Part shown: positions 23,857 through 41,364 of the stretch, piece after piece
How positions within the stretch are numbered: position 1 is the first letter of the stretch
How the letters are laid out: every line of letters starts with the position of its first letter
Virus record (IMG/VR): IMGVR_UViG_3300042564_002819
Coordinates: 186,001 to 250,000 of that record
Direction: 5' to 3' (one strand)
Length of the DNA stretch: 64,000 nt
The notes under the pieces: generated by a model
What the model was told of the DNA's origin: nothing
Databases searched by the model: none
The model's input: only the letters and a program-made list of their open reading frames with translations
Made by a program: the position numbers and the translations under genes

Positions 23857-23905
23857 CACGTCATACGGCCCCGTATGACACGTCGTTAGCCACCGTATGA
23901 CACGG
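23857..23905. repeat. CCGTATGAC repeat and palindrome; left arm of 19-bp inverted repeat with 41299-41317
   Basis: GTCATACGG-CC-CCGTATGAC palindrome plus a further CCGTATGACAC copy. Confidence 0.8.
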
Positions 23906-23931
23906 TCTTGATTTTTAGCTCATTTTATATA

Positions 23932-24171
23932 TTAGACTACACGTTGTATAACAATGTTCGACCCACTGTAGCGAAGCAGGTAGAGTGTTATAGCACTGTC
24001 TGAACCATGACTCACTGACAATGCTGCCCGACCGGATTCGGGCATTGGGCAAACAGTGAATCCTAGACTTTCAAATTGTGCAGCCACAGGCCGGAGTATC
24101 AGTGCATGTAGAGCACGAGTATAACTGGAAGCCGTAACAGCAGGATCTACTGAGATGTGCCACGTTGCCAT
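23932..24171 (-). CDS. hypothetical protein, paralog of 24173..24418
   Basis: Shared TW.I...F...GFTV.P...V.H...SAIT pattern. Confidence 0.55.
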   Translation of the reverse strand: MATWHISVDPAVTASSYTRALHALILRPVAAQFESLGFTVCPMPESGRAALSVSHGSDSAITLYLLRYSGSNIVIQRVV

Positions 24172-24172
24172 G

Positions 24173-24418
24173 CTAGTCTGCTGACTCTGCTGTTATTTGT
24201 ATACTGCTGTTATCCCAAGACAGCATAAACACTGTGATAGCACTGGCTCGACTGTGCTGTACTGTAAACTGTCTACGTCGATGAGGATTGTAGTAAGAGT
24301 CCACTGGAGGCAGCACGGTAAACCCATGTTTTAAAAATGTTTGTTTAGCATATTCAATGCTGATGTTTTGATCTGACCATATATTACGAATATGAATCTG
24401 AATGTTCCAAGTGTACAT
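24173..24418 (-). CDS. hypothetical protein, paralog of 23932..24171
   Basis: Tandem paralogy. Confidence 0.55.
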   Translation of the reverse strand: MYTWNIQIHIRNIWSDQNISIEYAKQTFLKHGFTVLPPVDSYYNPHRRRQFTVQHSRASAITVFMLSWDNSSIQITAESAD

Positions 24419-24474
24419 ACAAATAAACTAACACAAACGTAGAGCAAGGTCAACCTGCCCTACGGGCAGTACCG

Positions 24475-24760
24475 GTACCCCGGAGGGGTACTCGTATGAT
24501 AAAAAAATTTGCTGCAAAAAAAATTACAGGAGTACTTACAGTACCACGGTGGTCAGTTTTTGGCCCAAGGGGTTCCTGGGTTGTAAAAAAATTCTGCCGA
24601 GAAAATTTATATAGAAGTACTTACAGTTTCAGGGTGGTGATTCGGCAACCCCAGGTTTGGCGTAGCGTGGGGGAAAGATTTGGCTGCCGCTGCGTTAAAA
24701 ACTGTGTCAAGCATAAAACGCATACGACCCCCCCGAGAAAAAAATATTTTTTTTATTTTA
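24475..24760. repeat. noncoding block: GTACCCC/GGGGTAC hairpin, ~85-bp imperfect direct repeat with A-tracts, C7 run and A/T tract
   Basis: AGTACTTACAGT at 24531 and 24616, each preceded by AAAAAATT.TGC and followed by GGTGGT. Confidence 0.65.
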
Positions 24761-24829
24761 CTATACGACACTTGACAAAAGTATTTTTGTTAGTGCAAGC
24801 ACAGCACTTGCACTAACAGTTAGCTTATG

Positions 24830-25192
24830 TTACGCTGCGTGTTGTTGCTGTGCAACACTAGCGTTTTTGTATGCTTGCAACACTTGCAAAGCACTATGCA
24901 AGCAAAAATTAGTGTGTTGCTGTGCATACTTTTGTTTGCTTTGTGCAACAAGTATTGCAGCATTAATTGCGTGTTGCATGTTGTGCTGTGTTGCACATTT
25001 GCAAACATGTGCTGTGCAAGTGCAGCGTGTAGCATTGTTTGCTTGTGCAGCATAGTGCATGTTAAGCTGCATAAGTGCAACACTGTGCTGCACATAAGCT
25101 TTTGTTGCATTGTATTTGTAATAGTTAGCTTTTGCAGTGCTGTTATGCTGCGTTTGCTTTTTTGCGTAAGTGTTAAGCAAGTTGTTAAGCAT
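24830..25192 (-). CDS. early protein lacking Asp, Glu, Gly, Pro and Trp
   Basis: 120-aa ORF with promoter upstream and hairpin (24791-24815) downstream. Confidence 0.6.
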   Translation of the reverse strand: MLNNLLNTYAKKQTQHNSTAKANYYKYNATKAYVQHSVALMQLNMHYAAQANNATRCTCTAHVCKCATQHNMQHAINAAILVAQSKQKYAQQHTNFCLHSALQVLQAYKNASVAQQQHAA

Positions 25193-25229
25193 GTTGTGCT
25201 ACTTTGCTGTTTGTGTTGCTGTTACATAC

Positions 25230-25258
25230 TGTTTACAGTATTGCGTTAGCTAATGCAA
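25230..25258 (-). promoter_or_regulatory. sigma70-type promoter TTGCAT-N17-TAAACA
   Basis: 17-bp spacing; same architecture as other early promoters. Confidence 0.55.
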
Positions 25259-25336
25259 GTAAAATAACGCATAATAAAATTGCTTTATTAGTGCAAACAA
25301 CGCAATATTATTACGTGCTTTTTTTGCATTTTGTTG

Positions 25337-25365
25337 TTGCGTTTGCTGTGCTGTGCTGCTATACA
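25337..25365 (+). promoter_or_regulatory. sigma70-type promoter TTGCGT-N17-TATACA with extended -10 TG
   Basis: 17-bp spacing, upstream of 25403. Confidence 0.6.
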
Positions 25366-25402
25366 GTATGCATACAGCAACTAACAGCAAAGTGTAACAC
25401 AC

Positions 25403-25705
25403 ATGCAATACGCAAACTATGCTAGCGTTGTTAACGCTATTAACTGTTATGACGACACTGTGCTTCGTGAAGCACAGCAGCTTGCACTAGCTATAGCACA
25501 GCACAACGAAGACTACTGCACAGACAGCTTGTTTGACGCAGTTAACGAAAGCGTTGACGACTTGGGTATGCAAGCTTGTTGGCAGCACACGGAAATGCGT
25601 AGTGCAATTGAACAGTATAACGACGAGTGCTACAGCACAGCAATTTACGAGCTTGTAATTGCAATGCTAAAGCGTAGCTCAGCATACGAGCAAGCGTTTA
25701 CGTAA
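25403..25705 (+). CDS. acidic early protein, candidate Ocr-like DNA mimic
   Basis: ~16 D/E versus 4 K/R; TDSLFDAVNESVDD and AIYELV resemble T7 Ocr segments. Confidence 0.5.
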   Translation: MQYANYASVVNAINCYDDTVLREAQQLALAIAQHNEDYCTDSLFDAVNESVDDLGMQACWQHTEMRSAIEQYNDECYSTAIYELVIAMLKRSSAYEQAFT

Positions 25706-25730
25706 CGCAAGCTTTTAAAAAAAACAAGCA

Positions 25731-25754
25731 CAGTGCAAGTGTAAGCTTGCACTG
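25731..25754. terminator. AGTGCAAG/CTTGCACT hairpin between convergent genes
   Basis: CAGTGCAAG-N6-CTTGCACTG; family copies at 24791, 25829, 26099, 26515, 26786. Confidence 0.5.
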
Positions 25755-25864
25755 TGTCGTCGTTTGTGCAGTTTGTTATTTTGTTATTTTGTTATTTTGG
25801 GGCGGGCCGGGGGATAGAACTTGGGGTAGCTAGTGCAAGCATTACACTTGCACTGGCTGTTTTT

Positions 25865-26047
25865 TTACAGTTTGTTTATGCGGCGCAGGCAGTAGGCGAA
25901 TTGACGTGCAGGACGGGTGCGAGTGCTAATAGACATGCTGTTAGCATAGTATTCGTAAACTTCGTTATAAAGGGCTCCGGAGCTGTCAAGTTCTTTTGTT
26001 TGTTTGTATACTGCAAGTTCCTGCTTTGCTGCGTTGCTAAGTTCCAT
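25865..26047 (-). CDS. small early hypothetical protein
   Basis: AGGA SD; promoter TTGCAC-N17-TATACA at ~26080-26108. Confidence 0.55.
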   Translation of the reverse strand: MELSNAAKQELAVYKQTKELDSSGALYNEVYEYYANSMSISTRTRPARQFAYCLRRINKL

Positions 26048-26162
26048 TTTGCAGTTTCCTTTTTGCTGTTTGTTTGTATTGTATAGCAGCTTGTATTAGC
26101 TAGTGCAAGCATTATTTTACTTGCACTAGCAATTAACAGCGGGGCCTTAGTAGACCCGTTTG

Positions 26163-26462
26163 TTACAAAACACAGTATTCCGTTTGAGGAACAAGTTCGT
26201 TTTCCTCAATGTAACGCAACACGCTAACAAACTGCTCCCGCATGTCAGTGTCAAAATACACAATTGTCGTGTGCAGTTCAACAGCGTCGCTCGTTGCAAT
26301 AAACGAAGCAAGTGCGTCAGCAGCACGGGCAATGTCGTTTGCAAACATTGCAATGTGTTCCTGAGGAATTGCAGTTGCAAAATAGTTTTGCGTGTAAGCT
26401 GCAATAGCGTCACGCATTGCTTTTACAGTGTAAAACTTACGCAGCACAGTCATTTTACGCAT
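26163..26462 (-). CDS. early hypothetical protein
   Basis: GAGGG SD; promoter TTGCAC-N17-TATACA at ~26496-26524. Confidence 0.6.
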   Translation of the reverse strand: MRKMTVLRKFYTVKAMRDAIAAYTQNYFATAIPQEHIAMFANDIARAADALASFIATSDAVELHTTIVYFDTDMREQFVSVLRYIEENELVPQTEYCVL

Positions 26463-26553
26463 TGTGTATTCCCTCTATGCGTTGCTTATGTGTACTGTAT
26501 AGCAGACAGTGTCGGCTAGTGCAAGCACAAAATGCACTTGCACCGGCAGTTTT

Positions 26554-26733
26554 TTAGTCTTGCAATTGCAATTGCAATGTGTTAAGCTTTTGCAGTGCAG
26601 CGTCTTCTTCTGCTAGTGCAAGCTTATAAACTGCATAGCTGCCGCCTTGCATAGCTTCTGCTCGGCACTGTGCAGTAAGTGCTACAGCGTTTGCGTAACG
26701 CTTTTGTGCATTAGCAAGTTTTTTGTTTTGCAT
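26554..26733 (-). CDS. small early protein (59 aa, MQNKKLANAQKRY...)
   Basis: GGAG SD; promoter TTGCAC-N17-TATAAA; below ORF-track cutoff. Confidence 0.55.
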   Translation of the reverse strand: MQNKKLANAQKRYANAVALTAQCRAEAMQGGSYAVYKLALAEEDAALQKLNTLQLQLQD

Positions 26734-26828
26734 AGCGTGTGCTCCGTTTTGCTACGTTATGCGTTGTTTATAGCAGCTTGTGTCTGCTAGTGCAAGCATT
26801 ATTTTACTTGCACTAGCAGTTTTTTGTG

Positions 26829-27020
26829 TTACGCTTCGTCTGCGTCTTCCTCAATTTGCTCCAACATAGCCGTAATGTCGTAGCCAACCGTCTGCATTGC
26901 AATAACAATCTGTTTCGCTGCTTCGTATGCATCCCAGCTTTGCACTTCGTCAGCATCCGTGCTGTCGTATGCATTAGCAGCAATTTGTGCAATGTTAGCA
27001 AACAGTTCTTCGCGTGTCAT
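26829..27020 (-). CDS. small acidic early protein
   Basis: GAGGG SD; TTGACA-N17-TATACA promoter. Confidence 0.6.
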   Translation of the reverse strand: MTREELFANIAQIAANAYDSTDADEVQSWDAYEAAKQIVIAMQTVGYDITAMLEQIEEDADEA

Positions 27021-27110
27021 GTGCAGTCCCTCTTGTGTTGCCCTATGTGTTATGTATAGCACAGCACACAGCACTTGTCAAGTAAAAAGTGCTGTGTGCT
27101 GCAAGTTTTT

Positions 27111-27377
27111 TTAAATATTACACGCTATAAGTGCTTCGTCAAGCATGTCGTGTACTGCACTGTCGTACGCATAGTTATACTCCGTAGCAAAATCCACGTC
27201 GCTGCTGCACATAATTGTGTCATATTTGTTAATGTTATACTGTTTAAATGCAGCAATTATGTCGTTTGCACTATTACAAAAAACGTCAACAGTTTTATTA
27301 ATACGCAGTACAATTGCGTTTGTAGCGTCGTCAAGCATTACAAAAACGTAATTAGTATTTGCTACAGTGTTTTGCAT
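27111..27377 (-). CDS. early protein (no Gly, Pro or Trp)
   Basis: GAGGAG SD; TTGCAA-N16-TATAAC promoter. Confidence 0.6.
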   Translation of the reverse strand: MQNTVANTNYVFVMLDDATNAIVLRINKTVDVFCNSANDIIAAFKQYNINKYDTIMCSSDVDFATEYNYAYDSAVHDMLDEALIACNI

Positions 27378-27504
27378 ATTGTGCTCCTCGCATATGCTGT
27401 GTTGCTTACAAATACAGTTATACACTATGCAGCACAGTTTGCAAGTAACGTTTTGTTACAGTTTTAGTGCGTGTTGTAACAATACGTTATCTCCTACCTC
27501 TGCC

Positions 27505-27852
27505 TCACTCTACACCCCAGCCACAGTATTTCTTCCCACGCACAATATCAAAAAACTCTGCACCTGCAACCGCACCAATCCAGTCGTAAATGTAGTCTCG
27601 TGCTGCCGTGTCCATCTCCCACAGCCGGTCTTCAACCAATCGCCAATCACCTTCGGCTAGCAGCACACAAACATCAAGCCCAGCACTGGCATCTCCCAAC
27701 AGCATAGCTCGCATAGAACGATCCGCTGCCCAACGCTCCTGGTCCGTCCGCATCTTTTCCATTACCAGCAGTTCCACTTGAAGTGCAAGTTCCTGCCAGT
27801 TGATGTGGACAGTGCCGGTAAGAGTGGGTTCATTTACAGTTACGATAGACAT
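27505..27852 (-). CDS. early hypothetical protein
   Basis: GAGG SD; TTGACC-N17-TATACA promoter. Confidence 0.6.
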   Translation of the reverse strand: MSIVTVNEPTLTGTVHINWQELALQVELLVMEKMRTDQERWAADRSMRAMLLGDASAGLDVCVLLAEGDWRLVEDRLWEMDTAARDYIYDWIGAVAGAEFFDIVRGKKYCGWGVE

Positions 27853-27900
27853 CTGTTTGTCCTCTGTGTTGCTGTCTGTTGTATGCTGTATACAGTGTTT

Positions 27901-28074
27901 TCAGCTTGGGGTCAACCCCAAACGATCGTTTAGGATTGAATTGATTTTACGGAGGATCATGTCTTTGATGCATGGCGGCGCAGGATCGTCCTCCAGCAGC
28001 ATAATTGCATCCAGCAGTTGCATATCCGTGCAGGCCTCAAGACGAGCCAGTTCTTCAGCCATTTCTTTTTGCAT
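27901..28074 (-). CDS. small early protein (57 aa)
   Basis: AGGAG SD; TTGCAT-N17-TATAAC promoter. Confidence 0.5.
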   Translation of the reverse strand: MQKEMAEELARLEACTDMQLLDAIMLLEDDPAPPCIKDMILRKINSILNDRLGLTPS

Positions 28075-28132
28075 TGCAGTTTCTCCTGTGCTGTGCCGTT
28101 GTTATACAGACTGTAGGAGCCGAATGCAACCG

Positions 28133-28405
28133 TTATTTTCGCCGGCCTGGGAACTGAATTACTGTGGCAGATTCTGCCACATCTGCTGGCATCAGATCAC
28201 TATACAGCGGGGCCGAATCCAGTGTATAGTCTTCAACAGCCATCAGTTGTGCTGTAACATCAAATACCGTTTCCAGGTTCTCTGGGTAGCTGTCGGTACC
28301 GTATGAGTCGATGGCTGTGTTGACCGCAGCACGTAGAGCTCGCAGCACAATCTCAGGTGCAGTGTAGCTCTCAAGAATTCTTCGCAGTTGTTCAGTAGGG
28401 TCCAC
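28133..28405 (-). CDS. acidic hypothetical protein
   Basis: AAGGA SD, GTG start. Confidence 0.55.
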   Translation of the reverse strand: MDPTEQLRRILESYTAPEIVLRALRAAVNTAIDSYGTDSYPENLETVFDVTAQLMAVEDYTLDSAPLYSDLMPADVAESATVIQFPGRRK

Positions 28406-28462
28406 AATCTGTTTCCTTGGGTTGGAGGTGTTCGCCTACTGTGGGCGAACACCCATTGTTGA

Positions 28463-28807
28463 TTAGTCCAGACGCGAGCCAGCGTAGGCAGTGAAGCCAT
28501 AACGCTTCAGCACTTCTGCGGCAGCACGAGCACCAGCTTCTTTGGTTTCGATGTTTTGTGCACCGTGACGGCTTGGGTTCCAGCATTCGTAAGCCTTGCC
28601 GGTCCAGTCTTTGCGGAAGCCCAGAGCTTCGATATCGCGACGTTCAATCTTACCATCGCGGGTGTTGCCCTTGTGCTTGGGATAGATCGTAACCCAAGCA
28701 AAGCCACACATGCCGCGGTCTACTCCGCCCATTTGTTCAGCAAAGAACTGGTTGGCAGCATCACGGGCAGCAGTTTCAAACTCTTCGCGGATTGCAGTGG
28801 TGTCCAT
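28463..28807 (-). CDS. phage protein (CGFAWV motif)
   Basis: AAGGAG SD; own promoter. Confidence 0.65.
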   Translation of the reverse strand: MDTTAIREEFETAARDAANQFFAEQMGGVDRGMCGFAWVTIYPKHKGNTRDGKIERRDIEALGFRKDWTGKAYECWNPSRHGAQNIETKEAGARAAAEVLKRYGFTAYAGSRLD

Positions 28808-28931
28808 CAGTGGTCTCCTTGTTTGCTCTATGCCTAATGTATAGCAGATCACAGTCTCGGGGTCAACAGGAAAAATAACCCGCACAATCAGATTGTGCAA
28901 ACCGTTTCGCATATCGTATACAGCGGGGCCA

Positions 28932-29237
28932 TCAGTTGTGGTAGGTCTTGGTTACGCGGAGAACTTCGCCATAGCAGTTGATCTCGTAGAGGTATGTCCA
29001 ATGACGACGATATTCAACTTCCTGACGGCATACACGGTAAGGATCTGGCTCTTGGTAATAAACCACAGGCGGCGGATATTCGGTTTGTGGATACACCACC
29101 TGCGGGCGTGGCGCCTTGAGTGCATCTACTACGATTGCACCCACAATGAATCCGCCGAGGATCTTTTCGAAGTCACCTGCGTGAACGGGTGCAGCAAATC
29201 CCAGTGCCACCATTGAGGCAAGAATCATTTTACGCAT
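28932..29237 (-). CDS. secreted or membrane hypothetical protein
   Basis: Signal peptide (VHA), glycine-zipper-like segment. Confidence 0.6.
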   Translation of the reverse strand: MRKMILASMVALGFAAPVHAGDFEKILGGFIVGAIVVDALKAPRPQVVYPQTEYPPPVVYYQEPDPYRVCRQEVEYRRHWTYLYEINCYGEVLRVTKTYHN

Positions 29238-29272
29238 GTTCGGTCTCCTTGTATGCTCTTACAGTATATATC

Positions 29273-29476: not shown

Positions 29477-29526
29477 TTTCTTCTTTTTGTTGACGGGCAG
29501 TTTAGTGTCTTGCCCAGGACACCGTC

Positions 29527-29876: not shown

Positions 29877-29939
29877 CTGCAGGGCCCTTTCTCTTGCTCT
29901 GTATCTTTTTATAGCATCAAGCGACACTGAGGTCAACCA

Positions 29940-34932: not shown

Positions 34933-35056
34933 GTAAGCGAAGCGTTGAGAGGGCACCAACAACTTCGAAAGTGACAGGTTGACGAGGGCAGTCTTCCTGT
35001 CTTATACGCCCGAACAATGAGGGCAACTGCCCGGGCGACTTGACCGTAGTGCGGAG

Positions 35057-36055
35057 TTAGACTCGACGCATTACGGTGTTCTCTGCTATAGCTTCCCAAT
35101 CGTTCGGGAAAGCCTGGGCCAGATCTGCAACCTTAAGAACGGTTCGCAAGCTGAGCTCACGCAGTCGTTCACGGTTCTGATCCACAAACTCAACCACATC
35201 ATCTTTGATCTCGTCTGTGAGTTTGTAGTCATTGAGCATACCGTCACCAACCAATTGACGAATACGCAACATCTTTTCACGATCAGTATCGATGGTCAAG
35301 TCAATATAATGACAGCGTGATTCCAATGCAGTCAAGTGTTCACGCAGACGTCCACGCACCTTGCTGAACTTGATGTTGGTGATAAAGATCGCAGAACCTT
35401 CAAAGCGGAACGAATCCGGAATACCTTCTTCACGCAGCTTGCGGCTATCCGAGTTCCAGTGCAGTGTCCTGGTTTTCTTCGAATCCAGTGCAGCTTTGAG
35501 CAGGTTCAACGACGTTTCGTCTGTGAAGATGCTGTCGCAGTCATCGAACACAACCACACAGTCTTTGTCTGCATACTTGTAGAGCTTGCAATAAAGACCC
35601 AGCGGGCTTACAGCACCTTTGATCACTTCGTACTTCTTAGCACCGCCCATGTCTTCCAAAAGCTTGTGCCGATCCAGAACTTCTTCTACACCGTAGCTTT
35701 TGCCAACACCTGGAGGTCCTGACACGATCATTGCTCGCACATCACCACGCTTAACAGCTTTGGTCATTTCGGTAAGCATGTTAAAGCGGCTACGCATACG
35801 ATCAACAATCTCTTCGTCGGTTTCCTCGACCGTAACAGCGGGGCCTTCTGCGTCAGCAACTTCGACGCTTTCAGGTCCTGACACATATACCTTGATTGCA
35901 CGATCCGGAAAGCCCGGAACAGCTTTACCATTTACCATTACGTACCCACCACGAACTCCAACTCGGTAGCCACCGACCAACGGCATAACCTGGTTGGTCA
36001 TGTCAAAGTCTTTGCCACGAAGTTTAAATGTTCCTTCCAGAAATTTTACCTGCAT
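35057..36055 (-). CDS. AAA+ ATPase
   Basis: GPPGVGKS Walker A, VVVFDDCD Walker B, ALESR arginine finger. Confidence 0.85.
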   Translation of the reverse strand: MQVKFLEGTFKLRGKDFDMTNQVMPLVGGYRVGVRGGYVMVNGKAVPGFPDRAIKVYVSGPESVEVADAEGPAVTVEETDEEIVDRMRSRFNMLTEMTKAVKRGDVRAMIVSGPPGVGKSYGVEEVLDRHKLLEDMGGAKKYEVIKGAVSPLGLYCKLYKYADKDCVVVFDDCDSIFTDETSLNLLKAALDSKKTRTLHWNSDSRKLREEGIPDSFRFEGSAIFITNIKFSKVRGRLREHLTALESRCHYIDLTIDTDREKMLRIRQLVGDGMLNDYKLTDEIKDDVVEFVDQNRERLRELSLRTVLKVADLAQAFPNDWEAIAENTVMRRV

Positions 36056-36108
36056 GTTTGCCCTCTTCTTGTTCTTGCAGTTTACTAGTACACAGACCAG
36101 TTGTCAAC

Positions 36109-36285
36109 CTAAAGTTTCAGCGTTGTGAAGTGTAGGAATATCCCAAGAACGGCCAGAACGATCGCAATAGCAACCGGCGTATTGATCACAGCCCAAAGCT
36201 GCTTAACCAACCACAGTGCTACACTCAAACCTACTAGGCCGACCAAGATCAGCAGTATTAGTGTTTGAATATCTTCTGAAGTCAT
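36109..36285 (-). CDS. small two-helix membrane protein
   Basis: Two hydrophobic segments; AAGGAG SD. Confidence 0.5.
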   Translation of the reverse strand: MTSEDIQTLILLILVGLVGLSVALWLVKQLWAVINTPVAIAIVLAVLGIFLHFTTLKL

Positions 36286-36343
36286 TGGAACTCTCCTTAT
36301 ACTCCAACTTAACACAAACGCTCTACAGTGTCAACGAAAAAAA

Positions 36344-36420
36344 TGGTAGCCCCTGCAGGACTCGAACCTGCGACCCACCGCTTAGAAGGCGGTTGCTCTG
36401 ATCCGCTGAGCTAAGGAGCC
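36344..36420 (-). tRNA. tRNA-Arg(TCT)
   Basis: Cloverleaf; ACCGC-CTTCTAA-GCGGT anticodon arm; GTTCGA; encoded CCA. Confidence 0.92.
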
Positions 36421-36464
36421 ATTATTGTATCTTAAGCTGAGCTACGGAACCAGCAAAAGAAGTT

Positions 36465-36541
36465 TGGTAGGGGATACCGGACTTGAACCGATAACCTGCG
36501 GATTATGAGTCCGACGCTCTAACCAATTGAGCTAATCCCCC
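36465..36541 (-). tRNA. tRNA with CAT anticodon (Ile2 or elongator Met)
   Basis: CGGA-CTCATAA-TCCG; GTTCAA; CCA; lacks initiator GGG/CCC stem. Confidence 0.88.
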
Positions 36542-36548
36542 GAAACTT

Positions 36549-36630
36549 TGGTACCCGCTGCCGGACTCGAACCGGCACGCACTAGCGGGAGATTTTAAGT
36601 CTCCTGTGTCTACCATTCCACCAAGCGGGC
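36549..36630 (-). tRNA. tRNA-Leu(TAA)
   Basis: GGAGA-CTTAAAA-TCTCC; variable arm; GTTCGA; CCA. Confidence 0.92.
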
Positions 36631-36649
36631 ATCTCTTATTTATACTGGC

Positions 36650-36850
36650 TTAGACAGGCCAGTTGTCAAACTCAACACCACGTCCGACTGTAACGCTCAT
36701 GTCAACCATGCTGATGTCACGCATCAGATTGATCGCAACCTCTTCGTGCCGGCGATGCAACACAGTTGCAAGTCGTTCACGATCACCTTCGCTAAGATTA
36801 GCAATAGATTCAGCTACTTGTTCGACAACGGTTTTCACGTTCTGCTCCAT
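36650..36850 (-). CDS. hypothetical protein
   Basis: ORF directly after TTGACA-N17-TAAGAT promoter. Confidence 0.45.
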   Translation of the reverse strand: MEQNVKTVVEQVAESIANLSEGDRERLATVLHRRHEEVAINLMRDISMVDMSVTVGRGVEFDNWPV

Positions 36851-36887
36851 TTGTTATACAGTATCTTAACACTTTTGTCTGTGAGTG

Positions 36888-37178
36888 TCAACCGGTAATT
36901 GACAGTTCTTTTACCGGTTGCAACAGGCTTGCGTGGACCTTCCACACCGTAGCAGCGTTGCTCTGGCGCACTTGAATGGTCTTGATGTTGACTTTGGTCA
37001 CAGTGCCAACGACCTGCATCCCGCGAGCAGCAAAGCTAACACGGTCGCCTACTTGGAACGTAGCAGTCTTTTGACGTGCAAGGTAAGTGCGACGCAGCTT
37101 GATCGCTTCAACAACACGGTTGAGTTCGTCGTTGTCCATCTTGTGAATCGCAGTGACGGCAGTTGCAAAGTTGTTCAT
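36888..37178 (-). CDS. phage protein with SH3-like C-terminus
   Basis: VGDRVSF...GTVTKVN.KT....W.V..SLL; GAGG SD. Confidence 0.6.
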   Translation of the reverse strand: MNNFATAVTAIHKMDNDELNRVVEAIKLRRTYLARQKTATFQVGDRVSFAARGMQVVGTVTKVNIKTIQVRQSNAATVWKVHASLLQPVKELSITG

Positions 37179-37317
37179 CTTGTGGTCCTCTTGTTGCCCT
37201 ATGTGTTACTTGTAGCACCAATAGACAGGCTCGTCAACAGGAATCTCTTCATCTTCTTCTGCTTGCTTGAGCAGATGCTGTTCAAACTCCAGATATTCTT
37301 CCAGTGTCAAATCCATA

Positions 37318-37506
37318 TTATTTCTTCACCCGCACATAAGCTTTGCCAAAGAACGCAGTGAGCACAACCACAGCCAACCAGTTCCAGAAGGTGTAAGCGA
37401 TAGCAAAGCCGAACAGCGTGTTCACAGCCCAGATCGCAGCCAAGGGCCACAGTATGATCCAGGTAATCAGGAACACGACAATTCCGGCCTTGGTTAGATT
37501 TTTCAT
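37318..37506 (-). CDS. small membrane protein
   Basis: IWAVNTLF..I.YT...WLA; AGGAG SD. Confidence 0.6.
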   Translation of the reverse strand: MKNLTKAGIVVFLITWIILWPLAAIWAVNTLFGFAIAYTFWNWLAVVVLTAFFGKAYVRVKK

Positions 37507-37516
37507 TTCACTTCTC

Positions 37517-37723
37517 CTATTTGACAAAGTATTCACGACGGCTACCTGCGCCATCTGTTTGATTTGTAGGCAGATAACTGAAGCCTGCATAGCGTCCAGC
37601 TTCAAACAATACTGCTTCGATCATGCCGCAAACCGATTCGCGACCATCCGCAGTGCTGCTATCACTGGCAAGATAACTATTTGCACACTTCAGCACAAAT
37701 TCGACATCAACAGTTTTACGCAT
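37517..37723 (-). CDS. hypothetical protein
   Basis: AGGAGG SD; own promoter. Confidence 0.6.
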   Translation of the reverse strand: MRKTVDVEFVLKCANSYLASDSSTADGRESVCGMIEAVLFEAGRYAGFSYLPTNQTDGAGSRREYFVK

Positions 37724-37790
37724 CTTTGCAGCCCTCCTATTGCCCTATGCCGTGTTATAGCATAGGGCATGATTCGGTGTCAACCAGTTA

Positions 37791-38204
37791 TTAGTCTTCT
37801 TCTGTTTCAGTTTCCAGTGCAGTAGAAAGTTCGTAGATGCCGTTGTAGGTGTGAACTTGCCAGACAGCACCAGGAGTGAACAGGTAGTCGTATTCTTGCC
37901 CGTGTTCTGCACGGAACTGACGCCAGTTGTGCTCAGTGCAAGCATCAACATTATGCTCGCCGCGATCACGCCCGTATGCATTGCACTCGCCATCGGGAGC
38001 CGCATCAAAGTCGTGGGCAGTGCCAATCTCAGCACCAAGCGACGAAATGTTGCCAAGAGCAATCAGTTCACGCACCTTGGCTTCGTCAGCGTAGTGGTCT
38101 TGCAGGATTTGACCGTTGTGGCTGAGGTAGCCGTCCCAGTGGCAGTAGATGCCAGAGACAGTGCCGTCAGCGTTCTGGATTGCAATAGTCGAACGAGTTC
38201 CCAT
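37791..38204 (-). CDS. phage protein (MGTRS...YCHWDGY)
   Basis: GAGGG SD; own promoter. Confidence 0.65.
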   Translation of the reverse strand: MGTRSTIAIQNADGTVSGIYCHWDGYLSHNGQILQDHYADEAKVRELIALGNISSLGAEIGTAHDFDAAPDGECNAYGRDRGEHNVDACTEHNWRQFRAEHGQEYDYLFTPGAVWQVHTYNGIYELSTALETETEED

Positions 38205-38257
38205 TGTGTGTATCCCTCTACACAGTGTTGCGTTGTGTGTTAGTTATATGACAAGCC

Positions 38258-38539
38258 TTACGGCTTGTCAACCTTTTCCGGAAACATTGCTGCGACTTTT
38301 TCAACGCCAGCAGCAGTCAGATACAGCACACGATTGCGGGTAGCAGTCTCAACATACACGCAGCCAGCATCGTCGCCGCGGCCCTGGTTCCAAGTCTGCA
38401 GACGCATATCCGGGTTCTTCAGCAGTTGCGTTATAGCCCGTTTGCGAGCCAGCTCACCTTCGTTATAGTTGCCATTGCAGCCACACATGCAGCCAGGACG
38501 ACCCGAGTAAGCACGAACAGTATCCATAACAGTCAGCAT
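38258..38539 (-). CDS. hypothetical protein (YSG..GC.CGC.G.Y motif)
   Basis: GAGGG SD; own promoter. Confidence 0.6.
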   Translation of the reverse strand: MLTVMDTVRAYSGRPGCMCGCNGNYNEGELARKRAITQLLKNPDMRLQTWNQGRGDDAGCVYVETATRNRVLYLTAAGVEKVAAMFPEKVDKP

Positions 38540-38590
38540 CTTGTTTCCCTCTTCGTTGCTGTCTATGTGTTAGTTATAGCAATCATTGAC

Positions 38591-38989
38591 TCAAGCGTCA
38601 ACCACTTTCTCCATCTCAGCGAGCAGATTTTTCAGAGCAGCGATACGCTCTTGCGTAGGGAAGAAGCGACCCGAGTAGCTGTAGCCATCATTGAGTTCTT
38701 TCTCCATAGCACGAGCAATCCGCACCTGCTCCTTGCGACGAGCTTCACTGTCCTGGATGCTACGCAGTTTGGCGGCATGCATCAAGCTAGGACCATAATC
38801 GTCCTTGTATGCTGCGCCACGCTTGTTGAACACGAACTCACGATCATCGCTCTGGACAAAGATGTGCCCATGTCCGTTGATCTTAGTCACAGTGCCAAAG
38901 CGGGCAGTCAACAGCGTTCCGCTGTTGCGATGCTGCCGAGCAATACCAACTGTTTCACCAACTGCGGTAACGAAATCACCGTATGCCAT
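38591..38989 (-). CDS. hypothetical protein
   Basis: GAGGG SD; own promoter. Confidence 0.6.
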   Translation of the reverse strand: MAYGDFVTAVGETVGIARQHRNSGTLLTARFGTVTKINGHGHIFVQSDDREFVFNKRGAAYKDDYGPSLMHAAKLRSIQDSEARRKEQVRIARAMEKELNDGYSYSGRFFPTQERIAALKNLLAEMEKVVDA

Positions 38990-39054
38990 AGCGTGTATCC
39001 CTCTCTGCTATGTTTCTGTCTATGTGTTAGTTATAGCACCAGTACCAAGTGCTG

Positions 39055-39249
39055 TCAAGCAATCTTTTCGCCAGTGCGTAGATTGTATACAAAGCAGATA
39101 CCGCCCAGGGCATCACGAACTTTGATAACGTCGTAGAAGCCCTGCTCCTTCATCAATTGGTGAGCAATTTTGCCTTCAGCGGCGTTGTAAACTGTGGTTA
39201 CAAAAGTCTCAACTTGATTGCGGATGCCATAAACAGAATAGGAACGCAT
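39055..39249 (-). CDS. hypothetical protein
   Basis: GGAG SD; own promoter. Confidence 0.55.
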   Translation of the reverse strand: MRSYSVYGIRNQVETFVTTVYNAAEGKIAHQLMKEQGFYDVIKVRDALGGICFVYNLRTGEKIA

Positions 39250-39314
39250 AGCCTGTCTCCGTTGTGTTGCTCTACTCCAATACACTAGCATCAGAGTAGA
39301 GCCGTGTCAACCAG

Positions 39315-39782
39315 TTAGGCAAAAGTATAATTTTCTTCTGCTACACCGTTCACAGTGCCGTCCAACGAGCGACCAGTGCAGACATAAGGCCGGTTCCATT
39401 TGCCCACATTGATGTGCAGGTAGTAGGCTGTGTCGAAGTAGTCCGTCATGATGTCCGAACGATCATACCACAGGTTGCCACACATAGCAGCAGTCAGTTC
39501 GCGGAAGAACTGACCAACAGTATTGTCTGCATATTGATCCGGACGATAGGCGTTGGCCTGGTAGTAGTCCTTAACTTCGTGGAAACGCTGTCCGGTGCGT
39601 TCTGCATATTCACGATTGAAACGGTTTGCTTCGCCAATCAGATCCAGCTTGCCAGACTTGATTGTAACAACCAGACTGGAATAGTTATCTACTGAAATGG
39701 ACCCTTTCATGCCATACCGCTTGAACACGGCTTTGATAGCCGGTGCCAACTGTGCCTTCTGCTCTTGATTCATGTAAGCCAT
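39315..39782 (-). CDS. phage protein, LPD29-like C-terminal D.MTDYFD motif
   Basis: SDIMTDYFDTAYY; GAGGG SD; own promoter. Confidence 0.55.
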   Translation of the reverse strand: MAYMNQEQKAQLAPAIKAVFKRYGMKGSISVDNYSSLVVTIKSGKLDLIGEANRFNREYAERTGQRFHEVKDYYQANAYRPDQYADNTVGQFFRELTAAMCGNLWYDRSDIMTDYFDTAYYLHINVGKWNRPYVCTGRSLDGTVNGVAEENYTFA

Positions 39783-39846
39783 AACCGTTATCCCTCTTTG
39801 CTCGGTTGCGTCTATGTTCTAATTATAGCACCAGCTGACAGTGCTG

Positions 39847-40026
39847 TCAACAGATTTCAACACCTTCTGAGTTGGCAAAGTCAGTAAACTCGTCTGCTAT
39901 GTTGTTCAGCTGGTTGTGGAACTCGTAGCAGGCAGCAGGATGCCGCTCGCCCAGCAACGATTGCTGAATTGCATCTGCTTCATCCAGCAGGTCGATCAAC
40001 CGCTGCCATTTTTCTTGTTGGGTCAT
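39847..40026 (-). CDS. small acidic protein
   Basis: GGAGG SD; own promoter. Confidence 0.55.
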   Translation of the reverse strand: MTQQEKWQRLIDLLDEADAIQQSLLGERHPAACYEFHNQLNNIADEFTDFANSEGVEIC

Positions 40027-40090
40027 TGTTTCCTCCATTGTGTTGCCCTACTCCACATACATAGCATGTAGAGCAGGGCAGGTCAACCAG

Positions 40091-40330
40091 TTAGTAGATG
40101 AAATCCAACTCGCCGCGGATCACAGAGATCAGGTCGTAACCGTCACGGCTAGGCATATACTCTGCAATCTCTTCCGCACTCCAGTCGCTGTGATCGCACT
40201 CAGCAGCATAGGCAAGGTCTGCCCACTCGTTGGTATCCATTTGACGTGCATCAACTGCATCGCCCAACTCAACCAACGTGACCATATAGTCGTCGTCTTG
40301 GCCACGCCAGATAACAGTATACAGAGCCAT
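40091..40330 (-). CDS. highly acidic small protein
   Basis: ~19 D/E in 79 aa; GAGGAG SD. Confidence 0.6.
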   Translation of the reverse strand: MALYTVIWRGQDDDYMVTLVELGDAVDARQMDTNEWADLAYAAECDHSDWSAEEIAEYMPSRDGYDLISVIRGELDFIY

Positions 40331-40473
40331 TATTCTGTCTCCTCATATGCACCAGCTTCGATGTCAGCTTCGATTTCGTCTGCAATACCACGCAGGATCA
40401 TTACAATTTCCTGAGGATCCAGATTGCCTTCATTCAGCAAGTGCTCCACAGTCGCTTGCAGCATCGTGTCCAT
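40330..40473 (-). CDS. small acidic protein (47 aa)
   Basis: AAGGAG SD; TAATG coupling; below ORF-track cutoff. Confidence 0.5.
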   Translation of the reverse strand: MDTMLQATVEHLLNEGNLDPQEIVMILRGIADEIEADIEAGAYEETE

Positions 40474-40534
40474 TGTTTGCTCCTTGTTGCCCTACTCCAC
40501 ATACATAGCACATGGAGCAGGGCAGGTCAACAGT

Positions 40535-40903
40535 TTATTCAGGAAATTCCAAACGCAGTCGATCCTGCAAACGACGAACTTCTTGACGAGCTTGATCCAC
40601 GGCTTCTGCAAGCATGTCTTCAAGATAACCACCAATGCCCGACTCAATGTCATCAGCAGGATCACAGTTCACAGCATAGCAAGATCCCAACGACTCAGAT
40701 CCTACAAGATGCCCTGCATAGAACACTCGAACTCGTGCGATGTAATGAGTGTCAATGCCACGATTGCAACGATCAATCATGCTGTCGAGATCTGATACAG
40801 TCTCATCAAAGCAATCGCCTAATGCAGCCTGTTCGTAGGTCCAGTCTACAGTTACATCAAACTGATCCTTGCGGAAACGCTTGGCTTCGTAGTAATGGTT
40901 CAC
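40535..40903 (-). CDS. acidic hypothetical protein
   Basis: GGAGGG SD, GTG start; own promoter. Confidence 0.6.
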   Translation of the reverse strand: MNHYYEAKRFRKDQFDVTVDWTYEQAALGDCFDETVSDLDSMIDRCNRGIDTHYIARVRVFYAGHLVGSESLGSCYAVNCDPADDIESGIGGYLEDMLAEAVDQARQEVRRLQDRLRLEFPE

Positions 40904-41019
40904 AGTGTCCCTCCAGTGTTGCCCTATATCCAGACAATATAATACTGCCTACAGTGTGTCAACTGGAAAAAACTTTCAAAATCAGTATTGACCACAAGAA
41001 CAGAATTTGCTATACAACA

Positions 41020-41112
41020 AGTGAGGCCAGGAAAGGTTCACGGACATGAACTGAGTAGGGAACGCGAGGGTCGCCGAAATCTGAACCTACGGTTTAATGA
41101 TTAAACCATACA
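41020..41112 (+). ncRNA. candidate small structured RNA, copy 2
   Basis: TTGACC-N17-TATACA promoter; GTGAGGCC start; CTGAACCTACGGTTTAATGATTAAACCA hairpin. Confidence 0.45.
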
Positions 41113-41298
41113 ACCACCAAGTGTATAGTTGAACAGTAAACCACCCAGACTGAGATGGTTTAACGTTAAACTATCAAAGTGAATCCACCGAGATAACACC
41201 ACCACCACGGCCACCACCACAGTGGCCAAATCATACAAAATGAAATTCCGGTTTTCGAAATGAGATTAACCTTCCGTACGGTGGTTATCGGGACGCCG

Positions 41299-41364
41299 TA
41301 CGGGGCCGTATGACGTGTCGTTTGAGGCCGTTTGACGTGTCGTTTGAGGCCATATGACGTGGTT
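41299..41364. repeat. 22-bp tandem repeat (about 2.7 copies) and right arm of 19-bp inverted repeat
   Basis: GGCCGTATGACGTGTCGTTTGA units at 41304, 41326, 41348. Confidence 0.85.

What the first reader, a model, noticed from the sequence alone, without database searches (positions are those of the whole stretch)
23857..41364. Early region bracketed by a 19-bp inverted repeat and CCGTATGAC iteron-like arrays
CACGTCATACGGCCCCGTA (23857-23875) is the exact reverse complement of TACGGGGCCGTATGACGTG (41299-41317). The left site includes a palindrome and an extra copy; the right site extends as a 22-bp tandem array (about two helical turns). They enclose about 17.4 kb of GC-richer, promoter-dense DNA. 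Inference: boundaries of a long terminal repeat or first-step-transfer module (T5- or SPO1-like), initiator or terminase binding sites, or an invertible segment.
Basis: partly seen in the sequence, partly recalled or inferred. Interest (0 to 1): 0.7.

Follow-up and report, generated by a model that had tools for sequence, protein, structure and literature searches.

The report
Repeat arrays flanking jumbo-phage early genes
Two clusters of a conserved 22-base repeat mark both ends of the early ("host-takeover") gene block of an uncultured 330-kb lake phage and of many aquatic relatives; they look like docking sites for one DNA-binding protein that fences off this block, but which protein, and whether the block is also a terminal repeat, is not settled.

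Summary
The 19-bp inverted repeat is exact. The 12-mer CCGTATGACGTG occurs only at these two places in the 330-kb phage record. Both sites are arrays of a 22-bp unit (core CCGTATGAC, then RYGTCGTTWG).

The sites enclose about 40 small minus-strand genes. This block has three tRNAs, an AAA ATPase, GC 0.478 against 0.372 genome-wide, and 8 of the genome's 15 TTGAC-N13-16-GCTATA promoters.

The same paired architecture flanks the early block in three other related genomes, with brackets of 8.6 to 9.9 kb. One or other site recurs in more than 60 marine, estuarine and lake contigs:
- The left site usually has 2 units and abuts a conserved 84-aa gene.
- The right site usually has 4+1 units, followed by TGGTTTAACGTTAAACCA palindromes and then the first early promoters.

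No recombinase, transposase, Rep or ParB gene is present. The block has one orientation in all runs and all relatives.

Best reading: protein-binding boundary elements of the early module, closest in logic to the inverted repeat pair in the phage T5 first-step-transfer region. The left array also looks like a bidirectional terminator.

A long terminal repeat, as in the relative PA5oct, remains possible. Only assembled contigs were available, and the roughly 2x interior depth is confounded by GC content and strain mixture.

The invertible-segment and transposon readings are rejected.

The parts
23845..23915 (.). Left boundary site. Units at 23860-23868 (minus), 23871-23879 (plus) and 23893-23901 (plus), 22 bp apart. 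The whole site is an imperfect palindrome (AAGACC-ACGTCATACGG ... CCGTATGACAC-GGTCTT) with T-runs on both sides.
   Evidence: Folds as a 17-20-bp stem with z -3.0 (plus strand) and -4.3 (minus strand). Terminator-like matches on both strands. Homologous sites in G001, L110, L003, L008, L108, L115, L118 and about 30 metagenome contigs.
41274..41371 (.). Right boundary site. Two degenerate inverted units (about 41274-41284 and 41296-41304), a dyad centre, then three direct 22-bp units starting at 41306, 41328 and 41350. An AT-rich tract (75% AT) follows at 41360-41420.
   Evidence: (I1, I2, D12). Homologous 4+1-unit arrays in G001/G002, L114, L115, L118 and about 20 metagenome contigs.
23857..23875 (+). 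Left arm of the exact 19-bp inverted repeat
41299..41317 (+). Right arm of the exact 19-bp inverted repeat
41091..41174 (.). Two copies of a second palindrome (GGTTTAATGATTAAACC at 41091-41107; GGTTTAACGTTAAACT at 41157-41172), lying between the right array and the first early promoter. A third copy is at 32688-32707.
   Evidence: (I14). The same palindrome occurs 5 times in L114 and 3 times in L118, at the same relative place.
23932..40903 (-). Early ('host-takeover') block: about 40 small minus-strand genes, mostly without a family; GC 0.478.
   Evidence: Coding-potential tiling. Pfam and PHROG scans of 49 ORFs found no transposase, integrase, Rep or ParB. Negative AT skew.
23932..24418 (-). 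Two tandem small ORFs (79 and 81 aa) abutting the left array. They are probable diverged members of the conserved 79-92-aa family that sits at this place in all relatives.
   Evidence: Family alignment A2. The HMM finds the family only next to arrays. The window ORFs match it only weakly (hhalign E about 0.002). The fold is generic ferredoxin-like.
35057..36055 (-). AAA ATPase (phrog_1250), the one large conserved gene of the block.
   Evidence: Orthologues inside the bracket in G001, L110, L115, L118. 47% identical to a PA5oct protein.
36344..36630 (-). tRNA-Arg(TCT), tRNA-Met(CAT), tRNA-Leu(TAA)
27055..40988 (-). Span holding the repeated early promoters TTGAC-N13-16-TGCTATA(A/C). Their first hexamers start at 27081, 28866, 29936, 30787, 31241, 38601, 39058 and 39850, often as repeated promoter cassettes.
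   Evidence: (families D1-D10)
41532..41610 (.). Divergent sigma-70-like promoters just outside the right array: minus strand 41559-41532, which would read through the array into the block, and plus strand 41582-41610.
   Evidence: consensus matches only
23717..23759 (+). Small GC hairpin (GCCGCGAAGCGGT) followed by the 13-bp AT-rich tandem AGCAAATTTTTTA x2. This appears to be the end of the plus-strand replication-gene block; similar hairpins precede the left array in relatives.
21765..23189 (+). DnaB-like replicative helicase, the last large gene outside the left site. Used to find relatives.
42011..42322 (+). T5orf172/MUG113 (GIY-YIG superfamily) ORF 0.65 kb outside the right array. It is present next to right arrays in only some relatives.
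   Evidence: L126, L151

Best explanation
The two sites are homologous cis-acting boundary elements of the phage's early gene block. Each is an array of one 22-bp unit (CCGTATGAC + RYGTCGTTWG) repeated at exactly two helical turns, so all copies face the same side of the DNA. Copies run in both directions from a dyad centre. This build is typical of cooperative binding by one sequence-specific DNA-binding protein.

The right (promoter-proximal) array lies upstream of the first early promoters. A second set of palindromes, TGGTTTAACGTTAAACCA, lies between them. The left (promoter-distal) array lies where the minus-strand early block meets the plus-strand replication genes tail to tail. It abuts the 3' end of a conserved 84-aa gene and is itself a long hairpin with T-runs on both sides.

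My reading is that the bound arrays fence the early module in three ways:
- The left array stops early transcription, which would otherwise run antisense into the helicase and primase genes.
- The right array and its palindromes control or shield the start of the block.
- The two arrays may be bridged by their protein, looping out and silencing or holding the block.

This resembles the inverted IRC/IRD repeat pair that flanks variable coding DNA in the first-step-transfer region of T5-like phages.

Shown:
- uniqueness of the motif in the genome;
- 22-bp phasing;
- conservation of both sites and of their positions in many diverged relatives;
- the early-gene nature of the interior;
- absence of recombinase, transposase, Rep and ParB genes;
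- a single orientation of the block.

Inferred:
- that a protein binds the arrays;
- what that protein is;
- insulation, looping and termination.

My odds: protein-binding arrays about 0.85; the specific boundary/insulator role about 0.4.
For: - Motif uniqueness and enrichment.
- 22-bp period.
- Two-site bracket around the early block in four genomes: the window (17.4 kb), G001 (8.6 kb), L115 (9.9 kb) and L118 (8.9 kb).
- 8 viral contigs, further viral contigs and 60 metagenome contigs carry a 2-unit left-type or a 4+1-unit right-type array with the same neighbouring genes.
- The 9-mer core is unchanged although flanking proteins are only 60-76% identical.
- The left array folds into a long hairpin (z -3 to -4.3) with T-runs. 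A T-run follows the array in the direction of early transcription in every relative inspected.
- Interior promoters.
- Small early-type genes without recombinase or Rep families.
- No ParB.
- The arrays tolerate either orientation relative to the same flanks. This fits a symmetric DNA-bound complex better than a directional signal.
- T5 precedent: 10.1101/866236.
Against: - No binding protein is identified. The adjacent 84-aa protein has only a generic ferredoxin-like fold, and its link to the arrays may simply reflect shared ancestry within the clade.
- The window's own copies of that protein are only weak matches.
- About 80 other relatives carrying the same helicase lack the motif within 10 kb. 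The element is therefore not universal in the wider group.
- A near-identical array occurs in an unrelated siphovirus, 0.9 kb upstream of its terminase gene. This could point to packaging instead.
- No transcript data could be laid on the region.
Confidence: 0.4

Rival explanations
1. The bracket is a long direct terminal repeat (as in PA5oct, T5 and SPO1), and the arrays mark its two boundaries. In inverted orientation they would present the same sequence inward from both virion DNA ends. They could direct staggered nicking or terminase cutting and duplication of the repeat, end protection, or a T5-like injection stop.
For: - PA5oct, the closest cultured relative (helicase 52% and AAA 47% identical), has a 39,080-bp terminal repeat with 105 genes, many of them early.
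- Tandem arrays cluster at both PA5oct repeat boundaries (my own observation, and the motifs are unrelated to ours).
- Interior contigs have about 2x the k-mer depth of the flanks in X2, X3 and X5. Blend arithmetic with boundaries at 23857 and 41317 fits X2 and X3.
- An array lies 0.9 kb upstream of the large terminase gene in siphovirus contigs L004/L006/L009.
- Contig ends are enriched near arrays (KS p = 1.5e-4).
Against: - Depth is a per-contig mean. It rises with GC (0.37 to 0.44 to 0.49) and steps at places other than the sites: 22.35 and 25.2 kb in X1, 43.3 kb in X4. Strain sharing or GC bias explain it equally well.
- No read ends could be seen, because only contigs were served.
- Left arrays occur about 11:11 in either orientation relative to the same neighbouring gene. 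This is odd for a directional packaging signal.
- Contig ends lie on either side of the arrays and one falls at the palindrome centre (L181), as expected for assembly-graph breaks at repeats.
- No protein homology between the window and the PA5oct repeat.
Confidence: 0.22
2. The arrays are iterons of one or two replication origins, with the adjacent AT-rich tracts as unwinding elements. The second array would act as a handcuffing or control locus, like incA and incC of plasmid P1.
For: - 22-bp phased direct repeats, 3-5 per site.
- AT-rich tracts next to the arrays: 75% AT at 41360-41420, plus a 13-bp AT-rich tandem at 23734-23759.
- The left site lies 0.7 kb from the DnaB helicase and primase module in the window.
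- The right site is at a divergent gene junction.
Against: - No Rep or initiator family was found among 49 ORFs.
- No DnaA box lies within 500 bp.
- The genome-wide cumulative GC-skew minimum is at 125.5 kb, not at a site.
- In relatives, 3.5-5 kb of other genes separate the helicase from the array. The array follows the early-block boundary, not the replication genes.
- Array orientation relative to the flanks is not fixed.
Confidence: 0.12
3. The arrays are ends of a mobile or exchangeable cassette. Either they are Tn7- or Mu-like ends with multiple 22-bp transposase sites, or they are conserved homology anchors that let co-infecting phages swap the variable early block.
For: - The numbers of 22-bp units are unequal at the two ends (2-3 against 4-5), as in Tn7 and Mu ends (from general knowledge, not tested here).
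- The interior varies strongly in length and content between relatives (8.6-17.4 kb) while the ends are conserved.
- The interior has a deviant GC content.
- GIY-YIG-type genes lie near some arrays.
Against: - There is no transposase, integrase or TnsC/MuB-type set; the AAA ATPase is a conserved phage gene also found in PA5oct and T4-like phages.
- The block sits at the same locus, in the same orientation, in every relative, with no empty site seen.
- A GC-richer minus-strand block after the helicase is also present in relatives that lack the motif.
Confidence: 0.07
4. The arrays are plain structural elements (intrinsic terminators or cruciform-forming palindromes) with no dedicated binding protein.
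For: Hairpin plus T-run at the left site on both strands. A T-run follows the arrays in relatives. In the siphovirus the array sits at a convergent junction next to a hairpin.
Against: A terminator needs structure, not sequence. Yet the 9-mer core and the GTCGTT part are kept letter for letter across genomes whose proteins differ by 25-40%, and no compensatory stem changes are seen. The exact 22-bp phasing and the 4+1 right arrays upstream of promoters are not explained. The right site does not fold better than shuffles (z -0.56).
Confidence: 0.06
5. The 17.4-kb segment is invertible by site-specific recombination between the inverted repeats.
For: An exact 19-bp inverted repeat at the two ends.
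Against: No invertase or recombinase was found. Contigs of 4-5 independent lake metagenomes show one orientation and no inversion joints. The block has the same orientation relative to the helicase and to the 47.7-49.6-kb genes in all relatives.
Confidence: 0.01

Closest known systems
Inverted repeat pair IRC-spacer-IRD / IRD'-spacer-IRC' (injection-stop region) in the first-step-transfer DNA of T5-like phages (Davison, bioRxiv 10.1101/866236)
   Same: Two copies of a composite, protein-binding repeat cluster in inverted orientation, a variable distance apart. They flank poorly conserved pre-early or early coding DNA, are conserved across diverged relatives, and are rich in nested direct repeats and palindromes. 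A homing-endonuclease gene is inserted nearby in some members.
   Different: The T5 elements are 131 bp long, 1.9-4.3 kb apart, lie inside a proven terminal repeat and carry paired host DnaA boxes. Here the unit is a different 22-bp sequence, no DnaA box is present, the sites are 8.6-17.4 kb apart and enclose the whole early block, and neither a terminal repeat nor two-step entry is shown.
Long direct terminal repeat of Pseudomonas jumbo phage PA5oct (MK797984.1, 1-39080; PMC7318152)
   Same: Closest cultured relative by helicase and AAA ATPase. A long block of more than 100 small, mostly unknown, early-transcribed genes driven by host-type TTGAC/TATAAT promoters. Tandem arrays sit at both repeat boundaries.
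   Different: The PA5oct repeat is defined by 2x coverage, which could not be tested here. Its boundary arrays are direct, not inverted, with unrelated sequence and 12-, 17- and 21-bp periods. There is no protein homology to the window's block. Its boundaries do not coincide with strand switches.
Iteron arrays of theta-type plasmid and phage origins (P1 incC/incA, R6K, pSC101, lambda ori)
   Same: Direct repeats about 19-22 bp long at a 22-bp phase, 3-5 per array. An inverted copy forms an operator-like dyad. An AT-rich tract is adjacent. There are two arrays that could pair.
   Different: There is no initiator gene beside them, no DnaA box and no skew signal. The arrays are 8.6-17.4 kb apart and follow the boundaries of a transcription block. 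Their orientation relative to the flanks is free.
Lambda OL/OR operator clusters looped by CI
   Same: Two clusters of phased binding sites flank a gene block and sit at the start of early transcription. Long-range bridging is a plausible way to strengthen control.
   Different: Lambda operators overlap the promoters they control. Here the right array is about 300 bp from the first promoter and the left array is at the 3' end of the block. No repressor has been found, and the phage shows no lysogeny genes in the window.
Promoter-early stem-loop (PeSL) cassettes of T4-type phages (recalled from the literature, not retrieved here)
   Same: Inside the bracket, repeated early-promoter cassettes with adjacent stem-loops separate small novel ORFs in a hypervariable region (families D1-D10).
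   Different: These concern the interior repeats, not the CCGTATGAC arrays. The resemblance is recalled from memory and was not tested.

Membership tests
Long direct terminal repeat (T5 / SPO1 / PA5oct type) | Region present twice per virion genome: 2x read depth with sharp steps at both boundaries | tested here: inconclusive
   Only Logan contigs with per-contig mean depth were available. The interior is about 2x the flanks in X2, X3 and X5, and more in X1. But steps also occur at 22.35, 25.2 and 43.3 kb, and depth rises with GC.
Long direct terminal repeat (T5 / SPO1 / PA5oct type) | Fixed physical DNA ends: read-start pile-ups at the boundaries | not testable with these tools
   No raw reads were served for any of the 24 runs. 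Both read-laying runs gave contigs only.
Long direct terminal repeat (T5 / SPO1 / PA5oct type) | Repeat carries early / host-takeover genes under host-type promoters | tested here: met
T5-type injection-stop repeat pair | Inverted pair of conserved composite repeats flanking variable pre-early DNA | tested here: met
   T5 description from 10.1101/866236.
T5-type injection-stop repeat pair | Paired host DnaA boxes within the repeats | tested here: not met
   There is no TTWTNCACA within 500 bp of either site, and only 4 in the whole window.
T5-type injection-stop repeat pair | Two-step DNA entry dependent on A1/A2-like genes | not testable with these tools
   Needs infection experiments. No A1/A2-like family appeared in the Pfam or PHROG scans.
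Iteron-type replication origin | Three or more direct repeats of 17-22 bp at about 22-bp phase | tested here: met
Iteron-type replication origin | Cognate initiator (Rep) gene adjacent | tested here: not met
   No Rep or initiator family among 49 ORFs of 22.5-44 kb, nor in the 10 ORFs next to the sites at E up to 1.
Iteron-type replication origin | AT-rich unwinding element and DnaA boxes beside the iterons; skew inflection | tested here: inconclusive
   AT-rich tracts are present and DnaA boxes are absent. The global cumulative GC-skew minimum is at 125.5 kb of the record, not at a site.
Invertible segment (Hin/Gin/Cin type) | Site-specific recombinase gene within or beside the segment | tested here: not met
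Invertible segment (Hin/Gin/Cin type) | Both orientations present in populations or among relatives | tested here: not met
   No inversion joints in 5 runs (contigs can miss rare forms). The orientation is the same in all relatives.
Transposon with multi-site ends (Tn7 / Mu type) | DDE transposase, with its ATPase partner, encoded inside | tested here: not met
   The AAA ATPase is a phage-core-like gene (phrog_1250) shared with PA5oct and T4-like phages.
Transposon with multi-site ends (Tn7 / Mu type) | Presence/absence polymorphism with target-site duplication | tested here: not met
   The block is at the same locus in every relative examined, and no empty site was seen. Target duplications were not specifically searched for.
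ParB/parS-type loading sites | ParB-family protein encoded by the genome | tested here: not met
   PF02195 gave no match in the 330-kb record, while the controls were positive.
Rho-independent bidirectional terminator (left site only) | Stable GC-containing hairpin followed by a T-run on both strands at a convergent junction | tested here: met
   T-runs also follow the arrays in relatives. No transcript ends are available.

The most novel reading that the evidence does not exclude
The arrays and the adjacent, highly conserved 84-aa ferredoxin-fold protein form a previously undescribed phage system. The protein (or another phage factor) binds the 22-bp units at both ends of the early block and bridges them. 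The whole host-takeover module would then be looped out and handled as a unit: silenced after the early phase, or held or cut as the first-entering, terminally repeated DNA. This would occur in a cosmopolitan clade of uncultured marine and freshwater jumbo phages.
Probability: 0.15. Interest if true: 0.75.

Novelty: new variant of a known kind. Interest (0 to 1): 0.55.

Why it matters
How jumbo phages organise and switch off their large, fast-evolving host-takeover regions is poorly known, and almost nothing is known for uncultured aquatic clades.

This finding gives a sharply defined non-coding element that is conserved across lakes, estuaries and oceans. It marks both ends of the early block, and a tightly linked, highly conserved small protein of unknown function sits beside it. 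That provides three things:
- a simple sequence marker for locating early regions, and possibly genome ends, in metagenomic jumbo-phage contigs;
- a concrete DNA-protein pair to test;
- a second, independent example of the still unexplained T5-type inverted repeat pair around pre-early genes.

If the arrays prove to be terminal-repeat boundaries, they would allow genome termini of this clade to be predicted from sequence alone.

Tried and rejected
1. Megablast of the 20-kb region against cultured phages found only tRNA matches.
2. Searching the 80 best helicase-bearing relatives for the motif or for any analogous 18-26-bp tandem array within 10 kb found none. The element is therefore confined to a subclade.
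3. A search for a DNA-binding protein next to the sites by Pfam at E up to 1 found nothing.
4. A search for a protein shared between the siphovirus contig L004 and the jumbo phage found only the large terminase, at 24% identity.
5. The L105/L112 hit proved to be a chance match inside the T4-like tail-tube gene gp19 and was discarded. L106, L107, L111 and L113 also look like chance matches.
6. Rfam found only the three tRNAs.
7. The fold of the 84-aa protein is generic ferredoxin-like, so no function can be read from it. In particular, no E2/EBNA1-like or Cas6-like match stood out.
8. There is no protein homology between the PA5oct terminal repeat and the window.
9. The genome-contig scan gave only one hit, a 1.1-kb phage-like contig binned in a Flavobacteriaceae MAG. 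There is thus no sign of the motif in host chromosomes.
10. A literature search for the 9-mer found only primer sequences.
11. The enrichment of contig ends near arrays was considered as evidence for physical ends. It was set aside because ends fall on either side of the arrays and at the palindrome centre, as repeat-induced graph breaks would.
12. No complex-prediction job was sent. Jobs that include DNA give no verdict, and no binding claim is made.

Full report
**What the window is.** The window is bases 186,001-250,000 of a 330,024-bp IMG/VR virus record. The record is classed as linear, with a CheckV completeness of 93%. Left of the finding lies a replication module: primase at 19163-20152, a carbamoyltransferase, and a DnaB-like helicase at 21765-23186. 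Right of it lie virion genes. The nearest cultured relatives are Pseudomonas jumbo phage PA5oct and its kin, with the helicase 52% and an AAA ATPase 47% identical. Next come Agrobacterium phage Atu_ph07 and Vibrio jumbo phages. At least 24 lake and river metagenome runs hold near-identical sequence, so this is an uncultured freshwater jumbo phage.

**Check of the observation.**
- The 19-bp inverted repeat is exact and extends to 41 nt at 80% complementarity.
- CCGTATGAC occurs 5 times against 0.2 expected.
- The 12-mer CCGTATGACGTG occurs only at the two sites in the whole 330 kb.
- A weight-matrix scan of the genome scores 21.7 or more only at the six units of the two sites.
- Both sites have a strict 22-bp period. 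The left site has units at 23860 (minus), 23871 and 23893 (plus). The right site has units at 41306, 41328 and 41350 (TRF period 22, score 102), preceded by two degenerate inverted units.
- The interior has GC 0.478 against 0.372 for the genome.
- A generic sigma-70 scan is not enriched. However, one promoter class with an extended -10, TTGAC-N13-16-TGCTATA, has 8 of its 15 genome-wide matches on the minus strand inside the bracket, mostly within repeated cassettes.

**What lies between the sites.** Coding-potential scoring shows about 40 small minus-strand ORFs tiling 23.9-40.9 kb. The block also holds three tRNAs and one larger conserved gene, an AAA ATPase at 35057-36055. Pfam and PHROG scans of 49 ORFs gave a cell-wall hydrolase, the ATPase, a T5orf172 ORF and otherwise unknown families. 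No transposase, integrase, invertase, Rep or ParB was found. This is a typical early or host-takeover region, transcribed right to left by the host polymerase.

**Conservation of the sites.** The evidence comes from several searches.
- A pattern scan of viral contigs for two units 22 bp apart gave 8 loci. In all of them the whole 22-bp unit (CCGTATGAC-RYGTCGTTWG-nnn) is conserved.
- These are true relatives with 60-76% protein identity, and the sites are syntenic.
- The 98.5-kb record G001 has both sites. Its left site, CTCATACGG-cc-CCGTACGAC...CCGTACGAC at 77.77 kb, has the same inverted-direct-direct build as the window's and sits exactly at the strand switch. Its right site, at 86.4 kb, has four units one way and one the other. 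The two sites are 8.6 kb apart and enclose the AAA ATPase and other early genes.
- Two further contigs, fetched through a neighbouring protein, show brackets of 9.9 and 8.9 kb.
- A metagenome scan added 60 contigs from lakes, estuaries and the open ocean. They fall into two recurrent types:
  - two-unit arrays with the helicase side beyond them (left sites);
  - 4+1-unit arrays with orthologues of window genes 47.7-49.6 kb beyond them and early genes inside (right sites).
- About 80 other relatives carrying the same helicase lack the motif within 10 kb. They still show a GC-richer minus-strand block after the helicase. The arrays therefore belong to a subclade.

**Fine anatomy.**
- The left array always abuts the 3' end of the last early gene. 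This gene encodes a 79-92-aa protein that is unusually well conserved for this region (23 invariant positions).
- Among the loci held at that point, an HMM of this family found it only in array-bearing contigs. In the 60 metagenome contigs it again lies beside the 2-unit arrays.
- The window's two adjacent ORFs match this family only weakly.
- Its predicted fold (pLDDT 83) is a generic ferredoxin-like beta-alpha-beta-beta-alpha-beta, with no telling structural match.
- The window's left site as a whole is a long imperfect palindrome that folds far better than shuffles (z -3.0 and -4.3). It has T-runs on both sides. A T-run follows the array in the direction of early transcription in every relative inspected. 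Small GC hairpins that end the plus-strand block lie just outside it.
- The right site is composite. The array comes first. Then, 100-400 bp further in, come 2-5 copies of a second palindrome, TGGTTTAACGTTAAACCA (window 41091-41110 and 41157-41172; five copies in L114, three in L118). The first early promoters follow, firing away from the array.
- Array orientation relative to the same flanks is not fixed. Left arrays are split about 11:11 and right arrays about 12:4.

- *Invertible segment: rejected.* There is no recombinase. Contigs from five runs cross both sites in one orientation with no inversion joints. All relatives share the same orientation.
- *Transposon: rejected as an active element.* There is no transposase, and the block sits at the same locus in every relative.
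- *Origin: weak.* The iteron-like build and the AT-rich tracts fit. Against it, there is no initiator gene and no DnaA box. The global skew minimum is at 125.5 kb. The arrays follow the early-block boundary, not the replication genes.
- *Terminal repeat: open.*
  - PA5oct has a 39,080-bp repeat full of early genes. I found tandem arrays clustered at both of its boundaries.
  - Interior contigs here have about twice the depth of the flanks in several runs, and simple blend arithmetic with boundaries at the two sites fits X2 and X3.
  - But the depths are per-contig means. They rise with GC, and they also step at 22.35, 25.2 and 43.3 kb. Strain sharing or GC bias explain them as well.
  - No raw reads were served, so read-end pile-ups could not be examined.
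  - Contig ends are enriched near arrays. They fall on either side of the arrays, and one falls at the palindrome centre, as repeat-induced assembly breaks would.
  - The free orientation of the arrays argues against a directional packaging signal.
  - A near-identical two-unit array in an unrelated siphovirus lies at a convergent junction. It follows a SegE-like homing-endonuclease cassette and sits 0.9 kb upstream of the large terminase gene. This is compatible with either a packaging role or a terminator/boundary role, and no shared DNA-binding protein was found.

**Conclusion.**
- *Shown.* The sites are real, unique in the genome, strictly phased and widely conserved. They mark both ends of the early gene block.
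- *Most likely (inference).* They are arrays of binding sites for one sequence-specific protein that fences the early module. The left array also serves as the terminator at the tail-to-tail junction with the replication genes. The right array, with its palindromes, forms the control region at the head of the block.
- *Closest described thing.* This is the inverted IRC/IRD repeat pair around variable pre-early DNA in T5-like phages (10.1101/866236). It differs in unit, size, spacing and the lack of DnaA boxes.
- *Still open.* Whether the bracket is also a terminal repeat needs raw reads.
- *Prior description.* I found no prior description of the motif.
- *Classification.* I rate it a new variant of a known kind of phage cis element, of moderate to good interest.

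Noticed in passing
window 24900-40600, minus strand (e.g. 27038-27081, 38561-38601, 39018-39058, 39810-39850): The early promoters occur within repeated cassettes of 26-53 nt (families D1-D10), often with a stem-loop beside them, between small unrelated ORFs. This resembles the promoter-early stem-loop cassettes described for hyperplastic regions of T4-type phages (recalled from memory, not checked).
   Followed up: partly
window 26099-26131 and 26785-26817: A 33-nt palindromic repeat (GCTAGTGCAAGCATTATTTTACTTGCACTAGC) occurs twice, 686 bp apart. In X1, X2 and X3 the Logan contigs break here, and the 714-bp piece between the copies has about twice the depth of its left neighbour. This could be a collapsed duplication, a flipping piece or strain sharing.
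   Followed up: no
window 41091-41110, 41157-41172, 32688-32707; L114 about 520-690; L118 2027-2100: A second conserved palindrome, TGGTTTAAYRTTAAACCA, occurs in 2-5 copies between the right array and the first early promoters. It looks like an operator for a dimeric regulator. One extra copy lies inside the block at 32.7 kb.
   Followed up: partly
L102:2216-2467 (minus); family P0001-P0028, alignment A2: This is a highly conserved 79-92-aa protein family (invariant DPFNYP..GKVQYF..EHPxYPG..RARF..H) with no Pfam or PHROG family and a generic ferredoxin-like fold. It is always the last gene of the early block, and its stop codon lies at or within the left array.
   Followed up: yes
L108 against L110; 60 metagenome loci L125-L184: The short arrays are found in either orientation between the same flanking sequences: about 11:11 for left sites and 12:4 for right sites. 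Something flips them repeatedly in evolution, or they are re-formed from the partner site.
   Followed up: partly
PA5oct MK797984.1, -315 to +131 around base 1, and 39109-39179: Both boundaries of the annotated 39,080-bp terminal repeat of PA5oct carry clusters of short tandem arrays with periods of 10-25 bp, and TCTATAGGT is shared by both. By rough estimate, the chance of both boundaries carrying arrays is about 0.01.
   Followed up: partly
L004 1214-1864 (also L006, L009, L156): An unrelated siphovirus (SPP1-type portal, HK97-type capsid, tape measure) carries a two-unit copy of the same array. It lies right after a SegE-like GIY-YIG homing-endonuclease gene and 0.9 kb upstream of the large terminase gene. 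It may have been moved there with the endonuclease cassette.
   Followed up: partly
L114 (RFXU01000450.1, 1,115 nt): The only genome-contig hit is a 1.1-kb right-site homologue binned in a Flavobacteriaceae MAG. The phage's promoters are of the TTGAC/TATAAT type, not the Bacteroidota type, so the binning is probably wrong and says little about the host.
   Followed up: no
L021, L028, L030 (about 2-8 kb downstream of the helicase): A GC-richer (0.43-0.50 against 0.35-0.40) minus-strand block of small genes follows the helicase region even in relatives that lack the CCGTATGAC arrays. The raised GC of the early block is a clade-wide trait with no explanation so far.
   Followed up: no
window 41166-41438 (minus) and 23191-23751 (minus): The 90-aa ORF that overlaps the right array, and the 186-aa ORF between the helicase and the left array, have low coding scores and no family. 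They are probably not genes. The 530 bp after the helicase may be non-coding.
   Followed up: partly
window 22323-22730 and 38556-38809: The Logan contigs show several minor variant branches and depth steps inside the helicase gene and at 38.8 kb. Several closely related strains therefore coexist in the same lakes and share parts of the region.
   Followed up: no
window 36344-36630: The three tRNAs, Arg(TCT), Met(CAT) and Leu(TAA), have the same anticodons as three of PA5oct's twelve tRNAs. The tRNA-Leu is 87% identical at the DNA level to PA5oct's.
   Followed up: no
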